64,000 bases of DNA, from NCBI RefSeq assembly GCF_001194135.2, contig NC_068982.1, positions 148,175,523-148,239,522 on the forward strand, read 5' to 3'. The notes below the pieces were generated by a model, which made no database searches, was not told the origin of the DNA, and saw nothing but the letters and a program-made list of their open reading frames with translations. Positions 52,336 to 63,732 of this stretch are shown in pieces; position 1 is the stretch's first letter, and each line of letters opens with the position of its first letter. The position numbers were made by a program, and so were the translations under genes. The stretch is from Octopus bimaculoides. Lineage: Eukaryota.

Positions 52336-52452
52336 CCATGAATTCTTTGAAAAAATTATATCCATTTTCGAGTTTCTTGCAAATTCCATAGCGACAGTGC
52401 TTGAGTTTGTATTTCTTTCCAGTTTTGTAACACACATTTTTATCTAAACAAC
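52336..52452 (-). CDS. Gene 3 module exon: GCLDKNVCYKTGKKYKLKHCRYGICKKLENGYNFFKEFM(G)
   Basis: tttttcccctcaaag|GT TGT ... ATG G|gtaagc; 117 bp, phase 1-1, 4 Cys. Confidence 0.9.
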
Positions 52453-53459
52453 CTTTGAGGGGAAAAATAGTTTTTGTTTATTTCAGTGATTGAAATTTAT
52501 ACTTGTGTGAATTATGTAATTATATTGGTCTCATCTGAAATATATAAATTATTCTTTCAATAAATTTATGACTACTGAATATTAACTACGTTTTGAAAGA
52601 CAAGTATGTACCTGAAAATTATGTCACATCTCAATAATAATTAATGCCTCAATCAATAAACTCACTTTACTAAACATGGCGTATGCTTTATAACAGAGGG
52701 GGAGGTCATTTGTTTTACTTATAGATATTTATTGATTATTACATGATTGATTTAATAGAATATATTCAAGAGTGCATTTTTCTAAAACATACCTTAATGA
52801 AAGCTTTACAACAAGTTTTGCTTTTTGTTGGCATTGTGATTAAATGTATTATAATTTGAGATGTACCAGATGATATATCTTTTCAACAACATGTTTTAAA
52901 TTCAATGCGAAAAGGAAGCAATGATTTTACACCATAGATTTTAACTCTCTGTGTTTAAAAGAAATGGCATCATTGTGACCTATCTTAGAGCTTCGCAAGC
53001 GGAAGAAAATGCAGCTTCTGTTAAAAAAGATTAGAAGTATATAGCTAATCCTAATGTATAGAACTTGGAATTACACGGAATTACTCTGTCTAAATTGCAT
53101 AACAGTTTCCAACATGGAATCATTCAGTAATATCCTCGTGCACTGTAAATTGCTTTTGAATAATTTGAAATGTAATCTTTTCTAATTTCTCTTAGAACGT
53201 TCCCCATTTTCATTTGCACGGACAAGTAAAATCTGTGGTGTGACCTCTTTGTTTACTACCCGCAGCATCGATAAAACACATCATTATTGTCATGTATTCA
53301 TTAAAAACTTAATTATCCCAAAGGACTGTGTAGTGCACAATGAATTAATTTGCAACACAGAGCAATATTACACTAATCTTCTGCCTTTTCTGCAGACATA
53401 TTTCTAGCACAAATCACATTGCATAAATAAAGCTCATAAATATTAGATGGAAGAAAACT

Positions 53460-54660
53460 TCCTAGGAATGAGGGTAGTTGATGTCAACACTCTTTGGAGT
53501 CTCATAGATTGTTGGTTTCCCAGAGATCTGGTCAAAAAGTTTGTCACTAACTTTCTTGAACATTCCCAGGGCACCTACAGAGATAGTTTTTGTTTTTAAT
53601 TGCAACATCCTAGATATCTCAATCTCAAGGTCCTTATATTTCGACAGTTTTTCAAATTCTTTTGCTGAGATGTTTCTATCAGTAGGTACTGTCATGTCAA
53701 TTAACAAGTATGCTTTTTGTTTTAGGTCTTTGATGACGATGTCTGGTCTGTTATCATTTATTTGCCTATTTGTATGTATTCCATAATCCCACAGGATAGT
53801 AGCATTCTGTCCCTCAGTGATTGGCTCTGGATGATGTTTGTAACAGTCCTTAGGGTGCAGAATATCATAGTGACGACATACTCTCCAGTATTGGCCAACT
53901 CGATCATGCCTGGTTTTATATTCTGTAGGTGCAAGGACTGAGCAACCGGCAACAATGTGGTCAATACGCTCAAGTTTGTCATTGCAGAGTATACCTCACT
54001 GTGTGTGACATTAGCTTGATAGTTCTAGATAAGAAGACTCTGGCCTTGTGCTGCTAGAATGAATCTTTCTCTTTCAACTTTTAAACCAACACTCTGCAAC
54101 CACTGATGGGTTCTTCTTATATTTATATCAGCTTCTCCCAGCTCGTTTGAGGTGTTGCGCATTCAATGGTTTTCTTTTCACAGTCTTGATATTTCCTCGA
54201 AGCTTTCCTGTTTGGCTTTTGCTTTACATATCTCTGCTGCCTTAGTAGGTGGTGTGTCCTTATCAACATCATAATCAGGTAGCTTAAGCTCTCGTCTGTA
54301 TTTACACGCTTCGTTGTGATTGAGTGCAGTTTCTTAATCTGTTCATGTTGCCTTACCATCTTGATCTGTTCATGTTGCCTTGCCATCTTAATCTGTGATG
54401 AAAAGTGGTGTAATCACAAAGTACCGATACTGCAACGATGGGATTGAATCACTAAGCACCCTAATCTCCGGGTGTAAGGTTTTAGCACTTGTAGAGTACA
54501 AATGAATATATGACAGATGTGTCAACATCCAACACCACTGAATGTGAGGTATTCAATTTCCCATTTTGAAAAGTGGCCTAAGCACATTTATCACGACCAA
54601 ATTCCATCCCGATATCATCACTGAATGCTTTCACAGACGTAGTAATCCTTTCGCACAAAA
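53460..54660 (-). mobile_element. Decayed RLE-type non-LTR retrotransposon (R4/NeSL-like)
   Basis: AFSDDIGMEFGRDKCA (RT end) and LIDMTVPTDRNISAKEFEKLSKYKDLEIEI...VGALG (endonuclease). Confidence 0.8.
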
Positions 54661-55039
54661 TTGTAGATATTAATCTTTTAAAATTTTCTAGAGATAATCG
54701 TTTGTATGTCCGATTAGAGAAGACTGTAGTACTTTTGCAATAAAAAGGATGTTTATATTTTCGAATACTTGGGGAGAAAGGAAAGAATAGTCATTCACAG
54801 AAGTTGTAGATATTAAAGTTTTTAAATCTGATCGTTTGTGTGTTTGAAAACTGTAGATATGTAAGTTTCTTGACTTATTTTGAGGGAAATTTAAAATACT
54901 TACAGGAAATTGTAGATATTCCAGTCTTTGAGTGTTATTTTTCAGTTGTCCTGCTGGGTTGTATTAGTGTTTCTGTGTTTTCGGCTGCTGACTGGTCAGA
55001 GCAGCGAATGACACGTCCAGCAGCTGTCAAGGCTGGCGC

Positions 55040-55101
<62 letters not shown>

Positions 55102-55477
55102 GAGTGAGGGAGCAATGCATGTCATCAAAATGACACTGGGGTACAAATATACGAAACCCAATATAACTATCATGACGTCTCATCTAAGGGTACACCAGGT
55201 ACATGCATCATAACCATATGTCGGTGACATGGTGAACTCATACAAGATAAATAACGCAGGACCTTGCAAGGAGAAACCGGTTAGGATTTCTTTTCGGTCG
55301 AGTAGCCCATCCCGCTCAAAAGCTCCTTGAATAACATTTGTTTACGAATGTCGAATGAAAGACCCAGTTTTCCAAAGGGGAATTATTCAAACCCCAAAAA
55401 ATTTCTCTCAACACTTTTTTCTATATATTGCGAGCTGGACTGAACTACTGCTATTACTAGCGGACGAGTATCTATAA

Positions 55478-55514
55478 CCGAGGATGACCATAAAGAGGTC
55501 GAAACTGTACAGTC
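55478..55514 (+). ncRNA. Minimal hammerhead-ribozyme-like motif (one core mismatch)
   Basis: CCGAGGA-T-GACC-ataaaga-GGTC-GAAAC-TGTACA-GTC; stem III region actgtacagt is a palindrome ending in a GUC triplet. Confidence 0.55.
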
Positions 55515-62145: not shown

Positions 62146-62339
62146 CTGAAAAAATTAATAAGTCAGTTCCTTATAATCACAAAATATTGTTCAGAAAGTA
62201 TAGAAATCTTTTTCAACTACTTGAATTGAAAATATTCAATATTCACTTAAGACTAATTAAGTTACGTATGTTTTATATTTGGATTGCGCTGGTATGTTTC
62301 AGTGCAGCGACAGCCAACTTATTGAAACGATAAACTGTG

Positions 62340-62500
62340 ATCTTCTTCTTCTAGTCAGGTGTCGCACTATGCGATGCTGTGGTCATCACGATGTCTTGCC
62401 ACCTTCTGTTCTCTGCCCCATGGACAGCTGAGAATAAAGACAACCCTGTGGCTGTGATGTCTTTTAGCCAAGAAGTGGGTAGTCTGCCTCTTTTACGTCT
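62340..62500 (-). mobile_element. RTE-like LINE 3' end
   Basis: GRRKRGRLPTSWLKDI...AENRRWQDIV followed by a gaaga tail. Confidence 0.6.
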
Positions 62501-63270
62501 GCCGTATGCCCCATTGACTGTAGTGCCCTTTGCTAGAAAATCCATCATCACAACTCCGCGCTGGTCCCAAAAGATTGTGAGTATTACCTTGCCTGCTGAG
62601 GGTTGGACACGAGCCTTCTTTGCAGGTGGTGAGTTATCATCCTTCCATTACTTCAACTGGACTCTAGCTCCATGATCATAGTGCTGGGTTCATATTTCAT
62701 CCTGTGTGATAAGTCTGCTGAAAAAGTCCTCCTCGTTTTCTTGGTCAAAAGAGTGTGGGAGCAATTGACTCGTACCTGCTTCTGAAAAGGTCCGAGCATC
62801 CAGAGAATCCTTCGTGCAGATAACTTCTGCATGTACAAATCGGCGTGAAGGATGTTTTCCTCCGACCCTACACTCATCTTCACCTTTTAGGCTAGTTGCC
62901 GAATAGTTATGCGGTGATCCTCCAAAATGGCGGCTTCCACTTTATGGATGGTGTCGTCACCAATAGCGGTATGTGGTCGTCTAGAAATAGAAGTTTCCAC
63001 CGATGTCCAACCATATTTGAACTGGCGATGCCAGTGCTTGACTACGTCGTATGATGGTACGTTGTCACCATAGACTTCTTTCCCCTCACTGAAAGTCGCT
63101 TTTGGTGTACCACCTTTCACGTATAAGAGTCTCATCACTTATCTGCATTCAACTGCCTCCATTATAACACCTTAGTCCACTTTAGCAGCTATGAAAGACA
63201 AACGAATACTAGTGGAAAGCTGCAATTTACAATGTGACATTTAGAGACATGTATAATTATATATGTACAA
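62500..63270 (-). mobile_element. Decayed mariner fragment
   Basis: VPSYDVVKHWHRQFKYG...DHRITIRQLA, LSARRILWML and DFLAKGTTVNGAY. Confidence 0.8.
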
Positions 63271-63325
63271 GTTCAGTTTCCTGCAACAACCGGAAATTGG
63301 TCAGAGGCCCAGTTCCCTCGTGTTG

Positions 63326-63419
63326 ACTTCACGGAACTCTACTTCACTCTCACAGATAATGTCAATGTGGAAAAATGCATTGAGATTATTTGTGAGAGTG
63401 AAGTAGAGTTCCGTGAAGT
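63326..63419. repeat. Near-perfect 94-nt hairpin
   Basis: acttcacggaactctacttcactctcacagataatgtcaatg / cattgagattatttgtgagagtgaagtagagttccgtgaagt with a 10-nt loop. Confidence 0.9.
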
Positions 63420-63612
63420 AGGGTTCTGTGTTCAAACAGATTCTGCTATGCACGGCTCTCAACATCCGCTACTAACTATGTTTAAATATGTTTAAATAAC
63501 AGCGATATAACGTTTTATACTTATTTTATCGAAACATATGGAAAACAGTAAATTCTGGCACGTATTATATGATATAAATTTAGAAAAGAAAAAAAAGAAT
63601 ATACAAGCGTAC

Positions 63613-63732
63613 CAGTTACTTCATGCCGCACATAAGATAGACGTCCTTTTCGTTTACAAACATAAACCATGCAAGAAAGTGCCTGTTTTATTCCTTTCCC
63701 ATATGGCTGACAAACTCCATTTATCATACAGC
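63613..63732 (-). CDS. Gene 3 module exon (type A): GCMINGVCQPYGKGIKQALSCMVYVCKRKGRLSYVRHEVT(G)
   Basis: ctttttaattcatag|GC TGT ... ACT G|gtacgc; 120 bp, 4 Cys. Confidence 0.9.

What the first reader, a model, noticed from the sequence alone, without database searches (positions are those of the whole stretch)
52336..63732. Gene 3 has a different module string (A-C-A-C-C-D) built by internal exon duplication
Exons 63613 and 61700 are type A and share intron flanks (61610-61925 vs 63520-63860). Exons 62026, 58095 and 57712 are type C, ending GYKWK(K/R)E, and share flanks (57640-57930, 58063-58330, 61945-62230). Gene 2 instead has five dissimilar modules. Module number and order therefore differ between neighbours. 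The C copies are nearly identical in their last 10-12 codons but vary in the N-terminal two-thirds.
Basis: seen in the sequence. Interest (0 to 1): 0.7.

Follow-up and report, generated by a model that had tools for sequence, protein, structure and literature searches.

The report
Octopus secreted gene grown by exon duplication
The region is most of one annotated but uncharacterised Octopus bimaculoides gene for a small secreted protein made of about 40-residue cysteine modules, one per exon; it gained extra modules by tandem duplication of exons with their introns, which is a clear but ordinary example of how modular extracellular proteins grow.

Summary
An 11-nt terminal coding exon follows at 47590.

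The A copies share 78% identity over 333 nt including intron flanks. The C copies share 76% over 234-284 nt (E 1e-40 to 1e-74).

The spliced exons reproduce two RefSeq isoforms of LOC106869873 exactly, so this is one transcription unit. Both N gaps lie in TA microsatellites inside the C3-to-D intron. The gapless O. sinensis orthologue has no exon in that intron.

In O. sinensis the two A..C units are colinear over about 11.5 kb. This points to one large segmental duplication that predates the species split. C2 exists only in O. bimaculoides. The 206-nt C1-to-A2 intron results from a roughly 7-kb deletion at a TTCAC microhomology.

AlphaFold models give a 2+3-strand fold whose best PDB matches are fibronectin type I module pairs, with weak statistics. 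Relatives of the module occur across molluscs.

Module exons evolve faster than their intron flanks. Function is unknown. I infer a secreted, fast-evolving binding protein. It is a new member of a known kind, of moderate interest.

The parts
63613..63732 (-). Module exon A1 (GCMINGVCQPYGKGIKQALSCMVYVCKRKGRLSYVRHEVT), phase 1-1, 120 nt
   Evidence: orthologue in O. sinensis L001 16404-16523
62026..62145 (-). Module exon C1 (ends TGYKWKKELR), phase 1-1, 120 nt
   Evidence: orthologue L001 20812-20931 (90% with flanks)
61700..61819 (-). Module exon A2, phase 1-1, 120 nt
   Evidence: orthologue L001 28269-28388 (90%)
58095..58217 (-). Module exon C2 (123 nt). It is present in both RefSeq isoforms but has no orthologue in O. 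sinensis.
57712..57831 (-). Module exon C3 (120 nt). It is skipped in isoform X3.
   Evidence: orthologue L001 34163-34279 (89%)
52336..52452 (-). Module exon D (117 nt). It is skipped in isoform X2.
   Evidence: upstream intron is paralogous to that of gene 2's D exon
49482..49595 (-). Module exon F (114 nt), the last module.
47441..47590 (-). Terminal exon: coding part GT TGT TCT TAA (47590-47580), then the 3' UTR. It is paralogous to gene 2's terminal exon at 24249-24048 (75% over 207 nt).
63487..63859 (-). A1 duplication unit: exon plus shared intron flanks
61573..61924 (-). A2 duplication unit: exon plus shared intron flanks
61940..62218 (-). C1 duplication unit: exon plus shared flanks
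58063..58318 (-). C2 duplication unit: about 100 nt upstream, the exon, and about 35 nt downstream
57630..57934 (-). C3 duplication unit. Paralogy with the intron downstream of O. sinensis C1 continues to about 57298.
61938..61942 (-). TTCAC microhomology at the deletion junction that shortened the C1-to-A2 intron to 206 nt. O. sinensis has 7337 nt here.
56929..57272 (.). Assembly gap (344 N) inside the C3-to-D intron, bounded by TA/TACA microsatellite
55768..55922 (.). Assembly gap (155 N) inside the C3-to-D intron, bounded by TA microsatellite

Best explanation
**What it is.** The interval is the body of one Octopus bimaculoides gene, LOC106869873, on the minus strand. It is one of at least three tandem paralogues in the window. 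Each encodes a small secreted protein:
- a signal peptide;
- a short B segment;
- a string of modules of about 40 residues with four cysteines (consensus G-C-x2-N-G-x-C-x3-G-x8-C-x4-C-x14-G).

**Why exons can be gained and lost.** Each module is one exon with phase-1 introns on both sides. An exon can therefore be duplicated, lost or skipped without breaking the frame.

**History of gene 3.** Its string is sig-B-A1-C1-A2-C2-C3-D-F-stop.
1. One multi-kb tandem duplication copied a segment running from upstream of A, through C, into the downstream intron. It happened before the split from O. sinensis / O. vulgaris (shown).
2. A further C copy arose. It is kept only in O. bimaculoides and was most likely lost in the other lineage (inferred from divergence).
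3. A roughly 7-kb deletion at a TTCAC microhomology brought C1 and A2 to 206 nt apart (shown by comparison).

**Splicing.** Annotated isoforms drop single modules or pairs of modules.

**Fold and likely role.** The modules are predicted to fold like fibronectin type I modules: a two-stranded sheet packed on a three-stranded sheet, pinned by two disulfides. They are arranged as beads on a string. Their non-framework residues change faster than the neighbouring introns. I infer a secreted extracellular binding protein. Its number of binding beads, and their surfaces, would be diversified by exon gain and loss, cassette skipping and positive selection. The ligand and the tissue are unknown.
For: **Gene identity and single transcription unit**
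- Exon anatomy and phases.
- Spliced window exons are identical to residues 42 to the end of isoforms X3 and X2.
- Gene identity.
- Signal and B exons of genes 2 and 1 lie in the window.
- The terminal exons of genes 3 and 2 are paralogous.

**Duplication**
- Shared flanks.
- O. sinensis units are colinear, 15873-27369 vs 27876-37411.
- Orthologous units are 88-94% identical while paralogous units are 73-80%.
- Module tree: A1+m1 80%, A2+m3 78%, C1+m2 84%, C3+m4 72% bootstrap.
- C2 has no orthologue.
- Deletion junction.

**Splicing**
- Isoforms that skip modules.

**Fold**
- AF2 pLDDT is 84.5 for one module and 89.2 for the A1-C1 pair, each module with 2+3 strands.
- The six best PDB matches of the pair are all fibronectin type I module arrays, with probability 0.72-0.98 (five of them 0.87-0.98) and TM 0.40-0.56.

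**Fast evolution**
- A1/A2: pN 0.294, pS 0.056, flanks 0.166 (Fisher p about 0.02).
- Orthologues: pN 0.129, pS 0.088, flanks 0.078 (N vs flanks p = 0.003).
- Module exons are 54-76% identical against 65-84% for their flanks, while the signal exon is 89%.
Against: - Function is not shown at all. No expression data, no literature on these loci and no Pfam hit on record.
- Foldseek E-values are weak (0.07-0.5), and the single-module search gave nothing significant.
- The cysteine spacing is not that of canonical FN1.
- dN/dS above 1 is not significant against synonymous sites for the orthologues (p = 0.19). Intron flanks near splice sites may be somewhat constrained, so relaxed constraint is not excluded.
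- The three C copies are about equidistant (32:28:32 informative sites). The order and date of the C2 event therefore rest on a clock argument only.
- The isoforms are Gnomon / genome-project models, and I could not inspect their RNA support.
Confidence: 0.85

Rival explanations
1. Assembly artefact: the repeated A and C exons are haplotypes or collapsed/expanded repeats wrongly placed in tandem in a gapped short-read scaffold.
For: The window has 12 N gaps, two of them inside the finding. C2 is absent from O. sinensis.
Against: The copies differ by 21-26% in both exon and flanks, far above allelic divergence. No N lies between A1 and C3. The independent gapless O. sinensis assembly has the same A-C-A-C-D-F order. 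Both annotated O. bimaculoides isoforms contain C2, and one contains C2 and C3 together.
Confidence: 0.03
2. Gene conversion rather than duplication: gene 3 originally had the same distinct modules as its neighbours (A, C, C', D, E, F), and conversion tracts overwrote some of them with A-like and C-like sequence.
For: The last 36 nt of the C exons are nearly identical, with almost no synonymous change. C2 looks mosaic between C1-like and C3-like stretches, and the three copies are equidistant. All gene-3 C modules form one clade apart from the C and C' modules of genes 1 and 2.
Against: Seven modules cannot come from six by conversion alone. The colinear paralogy in O. sinensis runs through kilobases of intron, not just exons. 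The TGYKWK motif is also kept in the O. sinensis orthologues, so purifying selection explains its conservation. Conversion may have acted on top of duplication; in particular, C3 could be a converted C'.
Confidence: 0.1
3. C2 is a recent gain specific to O. bimaculoides (a duplication after the species split), not an old copy lost in O. sinensis.
For: It is absent from O. sinensis and from the annotated O. vulgaris protein. It lies only 263 nt from C3. C2 and C3 share about 27 nt of extra upstream flank that C1 lacks.
Against: C2 is 76% identical to C3, while C3 is 89% identical to its O. sinensis orthologue, flanks included. On a clock, C2 is about twice as old as the species split. C3 groups with the O. 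sinensis module, not with C2.
Confidence: 0.2
4. The modules are decaying, functionless sequence (a dying gene), and the high non-synonymous rate reflects a lack of constraint only.
For: dN/dS is about 1 for the C pairs and 1.5 (not significant) for the orthologues. There is no known function.
Against: All seven exons keep open frames, canonical splice sites, all four cysteines and the framework glycines in both species, despite 12-30% amino-acid-changing divergence. The non-synonymous rate exceeds the flanking-intron rate (p = 0.003). The signal exon is conserved across the paralogues, genes 2 and 1.
Confidence: 0.07

Closest known systems
Fibronectin type I (FN1) module arrays (fibronectin, tPA finger, factor XII)
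   Same: - Modules of about 40 residues with two disulfides and a predicted 2+3-strand fold, strung head to tail.
- The best PDB matches of the A1-C1 model are the FN1 pairs 2F1-3F1, 4F1-5F1 and 7F1-9F1.
- One exon per module with phase-1 introns, the classic exon-shuffling design (established knowledge, Patthy's 1-1 rule).
   Different: - The cysteine spacing is C-x5-C-x11/12-C-x4-C. All four cysteines lie in the first two-thirds of the module and there is no C-x-C.
- No FN1 chain is found by sequence profile.
- Foldseek E-values are only 0.07-0.5.
- The proteins are small (200-320 aa) and consist of these modules alone.
MIG-18-like fibronectin type I domain (the UniProt/InterPro label on Mytilus relatives); C. 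elegans MIG-18, a secreted cofactor of the ADAMTS protease MIG-17 (PMC4856095)
   Same: - The module profile built here hits the Mytilus protein P0014 at E 1e-6.
- UniProt names members of that cluster 'Abnormal cell migration protein 18-like fibronectin type I domain-containing'.
- MIG-18 is likewise a small secreted protein, and it localises to basement membrane.
   Different: - I could not run the Pfam/InterPro model, and no Pfam hit is on record for the octopus or Mytilus proteins.
- No direct comparison with the MIG-18 sequence was possible.
- Nothing suggests a shared function.
von Willebrand factor type C (VWC) domains
   Same: - The only PDB chain hit by the module profile is a VWF C domain (7p4n, E 0.05). 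The match covers a C-x4-C motif followed by a hairpin and then GC.
- VWF C4 appears at rank 22 in the fold search.
   Different: - VWC domains have about 10 cysteines in 55-70 residues (established knowledge).
- The match is marginal.
Multi-repeat molluscan proteins carrying the same module (Babylonia, Ylistrum, Patella, Lottia, Lymnaea, Biomphalaria, Plakobranchus, Mytilus)
   Same: They carry the same GC..(N/D)G.C...G...C....C module in 3-20 tandem copies.
   Different: - They are much larger (up to 1495 aa), and some have VWA domains.
- They are weakly similar (E 1e-17 to 1e-4).
- All are uncharacterised.
- The short signal-B-module architecture was found only in Octopus.
Fast-evolving secreted cysteine-framework families with a conserved signal and a hypervariable mature region (for example conotoxins)
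   Same: - The signal exon is more conserved than its flanks, and the module exons less conserved than theirs.
- The cysteine framework is invariant while other residues turn over.
- The paralogues lie in tandem.
   Different: - There is no evidence of venom-gland expression or of toxicity.
- The products are multi-module proteins, not short processed peptides.

Membership tests
Class 1-1 modular (exon-shuffling type) extracellular protein gene | One protein module per exon | tested here: met
   Thirteen module exons of 114-123 nt in the window. Each starts at G|C and ends before the next G.
Class 1-1 modular (exon-shuffling type) extracellular protein gene | Phase-1 introns on both sides of every module exon | tested here: met
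   Every exon is a multiple of 3 nt long and the Gly codon is split G|GN. Any subset of exons splices in frame, as isoforms X2 and X3 show.
Class 1-1 modular (exon-shuffling type) extracellular protein gene | N-terminal signal peptide (a secreted product) | tested here: met
   MRCFLLLISLCIAYTPATSQ in P0001. Gene 3's signal exon is off the window. The signal exons of genes 2 and 1 are at 38410-38348 and 11938-11876. No signal-peptide predictor was run; this was judged from the sequence.
Fibronectin type I domain (FN1) | Fold: a two-stranded sheet packed on a three-stranded antiparallel sheet in about 40-45 residues | tested here: met
   AF2 models: strands 2-4, 7-9 | 14-16, 22-29, 32-39, repeated in the second module. 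pLDDT 84.5 and 89.2. This is a prediction only.
Fibronectin type I domain (FN1) | Significant structural match to solved FN1 modules | tested here: inconclusive
   The top six PDB hits of the pair model are all FN1 arrays (probability 0.72-0.98, TM 0.40-0.56), but E is 0.07-0.5. The single-module search had no hit with E below 1.
Fibronectin type I domain (FN1) | Sequence-profile similarity to FN1 modules, including the canonical cysteine pattern | tested here: not met
   The profile of 78 modules found no FN1 chain in the PDB sequences at E<=10. The cysteine spacing is C-x5-C-x11/12-C-x4-C. That differs from canonical FN1, which is my own knowledge and not a computed result.
MIG-18-like FN1 domain (InterPro/Pfam) | Match to the curated family model | not testable with these tools
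   No Pfam/InterPro scan is available, and the precomputed Pfam column is empty. The link is indirect only: UniProt names for P0031 and P0033, in the cluster of P0014.
von Willebrand factor type C domain | About ten conserved cysteines in 55-70 residues | tested here: not met
   Four cysteines per 39-42 residues. There is only a marginal profile hit to VWF C domain 7p4n (E 0.05).
Sushi / CCP domain (UniProt's name for isoform A0A0L8HLT6) | A beta-sandwich of about 60 residues with four cysteines and a conserved Trp; similarity to solved Sushi domains | tested here: not met
   No Sushi/CCP chain appears in the PDB sequence searches or in the listed matches of the fold searches. The modules are about 40 residues long.

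The most novel reading that the evidence does not exclude
The three-gene cluster could be an octopus-restricted, diversifying repertoire of secreted binding proteins. Three things together would generate many surface variants on one FN1-like scaffold: exon gain and loss between species, cassette skipping between transcripts, and positive selection on non-framework residues. That would suit a recognition role against fast-changing partners such as pathogens, gametes or prey. It would be a small-scale molluscan analogue of other somatically or evolutionarily diversified invertebrate recognition families.
Probability: 0.15. Interest if true: 0.6.

Novelty: new member of a known kind. Interest (0 to 1): 0.35.

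Why it matters
This is a clean, datable example of protein growth by tandem exon duplication. Several steps can be read directly from two genomes:
- the duplicated unit, about 11.5 kb and colinear in O. sinensis;
- a later microhomology-mediated intron deletion;
- a module present in one species and absent in the other;
- isoforms that skip modules.

It also gives a fold and a wider molluscan family to a set of octopus proteins so far labelled uncharacterised. One of them is labelled 'Sushi domain-containing', probably wrongly.

The gene is flagged as fast-evolving, which makes it a candidate for work on octopus-specific secreted biology. It does not change any concept.

Tried and rejected
**Searches that gave little or nothing**
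- The profile search of the 5.8-billion-protein set with the module alignment returned nothing. The exhaustive HMMER search was needed.
- The search with Mytilus P0033, meant to recover a Pfam accession, gave none.
- The look-up of encoding contigs failed for P0002, P0003 and P0023 and errored for P0025. It worked for P0024.
- The single-module Foldseek search gave only noise: pacifastin, a chitin-binding domain, MUC2.
- phmmer of the large molluscan relatives against the PDB gave only spurious FYVE hits or nothing.
- Literature searches on the locus and protein identifiers, on octopus plus cysteine-rich or exon duplication, and on the Lottia relative found nothing relevant.

**Analyses that did not resolve the question**
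- A three-way informative-site analysis to order the C1, C2 and C3 events was uninformative (32:28:32).
- I first read 61939-61925 as the original duplication junction. The O. sinensis comparison showed it is a later deletion junction.

**Features looked for and not found**
- A relic E-type exon in gene 3.
- An F exon in gene 2 between 28156 and 24193.

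
Full report
**What is there.** The window is Octopus bimaculoides. A concatenate of the module exons hits the O. bimaculoides protein A0A0L8HLW9 / LOC106869873 (E 7e-163), and orthologues in O. vulgaris and O. sinensis.

All module exons lie on the minus strand. Each begins ag|G(C/T)TGT, ends G|gt, is 114-123 nt long and is phase 1 at both ends.
- A1 63732-63613
- C1 62145-62026
- A2 61819-61700
- C2 58217-58095
- C3 57831-57712
- D 52452-52336

D ends in phase 1, so the gene goes on. A seventh module (F) lies at 49595-49482. A terminal exon at 47590 reads GT TGT TCT TAA.

Spliced together, the window exons equal residues 42 to the end of two annotated isoforms exactly:
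- X3 (282 aa): A1 C1 A2 C2 D F
- X2 (283 aa): A1 C1 A2 C2 C3 F

A product with all seven modules would be 322 aa. The signal and B exons of gene 3 lie beyond base 64000. In O. sinensis they are 6.4 kb and 2.9 kb upstream of A1.

**The assembly gaps.** Both N runs (56929-57272 and 55768-55922) lie in the 5259-nt intron between C3 and D. Each is bounded on both sides by TA or TACA microsatellite, and no coding sequence touches either.
- The flanking exons are phase 1-1, so the frame does not depend on gap length.
- D, F and the terminal exon follow in the same order and strand as in the orthologues and in gene 2.
- The gapless O. sinensis intron (3977 nt) holds no module exon.

A hidden exon is therefore unlikely, though a 344-N gap could physically hold one.

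**The observation.** The shared flanks are real:
- A1/A2: 78.4% over 333 nt (E 4e-74).
- C1/C3: 76.4% over 284 nt.
- C1/C2: 76.1% over 234 nt.
- C2/C3: 76.2% over 261 nt.

No other copies of these flanks occur in the window, apart from the A-type exons of genes 2 and 1 at 68-75%.

The C copies are conserved in their last 13 codons (pN about 0.1, pS 0-0.13). They are variable in the first 26 (pN about 0.3).

**The neighbouring genes.**
- Gene 2: signal 38410-38348, B 36417-36355, modules at 35500, 33157, 31012, 29307 and 28275, and a terminal exon at 24193.
- Gene 1 (LOC106869870, P0006): signal 11938-11876, B 6436-6374, first module 964-845.

By tree and flank similarity the common string is A-C-C'-D-E-F. 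The O. sinensis orthologue of gene 2 has an F module that I could not find in the window. It is probably in the 726-N gap at 27193-27918.

Gene 3 is thus the common string with an extra A-C cassette and an extra C, and without E. The number of modules differs between neighbours, but the order is not rearranged.

**How the extra modules arose.** I obtained the O. sinensis orthologous locus, which has no gaps. It carries A1, C1, A2, a C3 orthologue, D and F.

Orthologous units are 88-94% identical between the species, whereas paralogous units are 73-80%. The module tree pairs each O. bimaculoides module with its O. vulgaris/sinensis counterpart at 72-84% bootstrap. The A and C1/C3 duplications therefore predate the species split.

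Within O. sinensis the two units are colinear from 15873-27369 to 27876-37411 (six blocks, 67-84% identity). This indicates one tandem duplication of a segment running from about 0.5 kb upstream of A to about 0.85 kb upstream of D.

In O. bimaculoides the C1-to-A2 intron is only 206 nt, against 7337 nt in O. sinensis. The O. sinensis intron carries sequence paralogous to the C3-to-D intron, so the long form is ancestral. O. bimaculoides has a deletion whose ends share TTCAC (window 61942-61938).

C2 has no orthologue in O. sinensis. It is 76% identical to C3, flanks included, which is about twice the orthologous divergence. I therefore infer an old copy lost in the O. sinensis lineage. A recent gain with very fast divergence is the less likely alternative. 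The three C copies are equidistant, so divergence does not order the events.

**What the module is.**
- The exhaustive HMMER search found only octopus proteins as close relatives. More distant relatives were multi-repeat proteins. All those that carry names come from gastropods and bivalves.
- UniProt labels Mytilus members 'MIG-18-like fibronectin type I domain-containing'.
- AlphaFold models are confident (pLDDT 84.5 and 89.2) and show a 2+3-strand module.
- The six best PDB matches of the two-module model are all fibronectin type I arrays, with probability 0.72-0.98 (five of them 0.87-0.98), TM 0.40-0.56 and E 0.07-0.5.
- The sequence profile finds only a VWF C domain, at E 0.05.

I therefore call the module FN1-like in fold. 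It is not a canonical FN1 member: the cysteine pattern differs and there is no sequence match. UniProt's 'Sushi' label for one isoform is not supported.

**Rate of change.** Module exons are less conserved than their intron flanks, both within gene 3 and between the genes (exons 54-79%, flanks 65-87%). Between the paralogues, genes 2 and 1, the signal exon is 89% identical.

| Comparison | pN | pS | Intron flanks | Test |
|---|---|---|---|---|
| A1 vs A2 | 0.294 | 0.056 | 0.166 | Fisher p about 0.02 for N vs S and for N vs flanks |
| O. bimaculoides vs O. sinensis, six exons | 0.129 | 0.088 | 0.078 | N vs flanks p = 0.003; N vs S p = 0.19 |

The cysteines and framework glycines are invariant. 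This pattern fits diversifying selection on the non-framework residues. Relaxed constraint is not fully excluded.

**Function.** Nothing is known. No paper cites these loci. From the anatomy I infer a secreted string of FN1-like beads that binds an extracellular partner. The number of beads and their surfaces vary through exon gain and loss, cassette skipping (isoforms) and rapid substitution. C. elegans MIG-18 is a secreted basement-membrane cofactor of an ADAMTS protease (PMC4856095). That is a lead for the kind of role, not evidence.

**Verdict.** The case is a well-resolved but conceptually ordinary one of modular exon duplication, in an annotated and uncharacterised octopus gene. It is a new member of a known kind, of moderate interest.

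Noticed in passing
window 62380-63140 (minus strand), in the A1-to-C1 intron: A decayed mariner-like transposase remnant. It includes ...HWHRQFKYGWTSVETSISRRPHTAIGDDTIHKVEAAILEDHRITIRQLA..., broken by stops. It accounts for most of the 1467-nt intron.
   Followed up: partly
window 53460-54400 (minus strand), in the C3-to-D intron: Fragments of a retroelement-like ORF (...RPDIVIKDLKQKAYLLIDMTVPTDRNISAKEFEKLSKYKDLEIEISRM...). Related pieces occur in the O. sinensis C1-to-A2 intron, so this is an interspersed repeat.
   Followed up: partly
window 35500-35381 (gene 2, A-type module): The fourth cysteine is replaced by Ser and a new Cys appears 7 residues later (CMTYISERRGHGCYV). The O. sinensis orthologue has the standard pattern (CMTYVCERRGHGSFV). 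This is either a real cysteine shift or sequence errors.
   Followed up: no
window 27193-27918 (726 N), between gene 2's E exon and its terminal exon at 24193: Gene 2's expected last module (F, GCILNNKCYPPGW... in O. sinensis P0005) was not found anywhere in the window. It is probably hidden in this gap, so 'five modules' for gene 2 is likely an undercount.
   Followed up: partly
window 33157-33035 (gene 2, second module): This intact module exon is absent from O. sinensis isoform X3 of the orthologous gene (P0005). That suggests cassette skipping, or loss, in gene 2 as well.
   Followed up: no
window 57935-58060, between C2 and C3: A G+C-rich insert of about 125 nt (ccggaaagtcggggacacgccgaccgtg...) sits in an otherwise A+T-rich intron, between C2's short downstream flank and C3's upstream flank. 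Its origin is unknown.
   Followed up: no
window 63796-63838, upstream flank of A1: A small tandem duplication of about 21 nt (acaagaactaacatgtatt repeated) that the A2 flank lacks.
   Followed up: no
module exons and flanks of genes 1, 2 and 3 across the window: Intron sequence within about 60-130 nt of the module exons stays alignable between paralogous genes (65-84%), and is better conserved than the exons themselves. This could reflect splicing control of the cassette exons.
   Followed up: partly
P0007 (O. vulgaris CAI9717959.1) and P0025 (CAI9717957.1): The O. vulgaris gene models for this cluster look partly wrong. P0007 fuses two modules to a low-complexity K/E tail. P0025 carries a 63-residue N-terminal extension before the signal peptide.
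   Followed up: no
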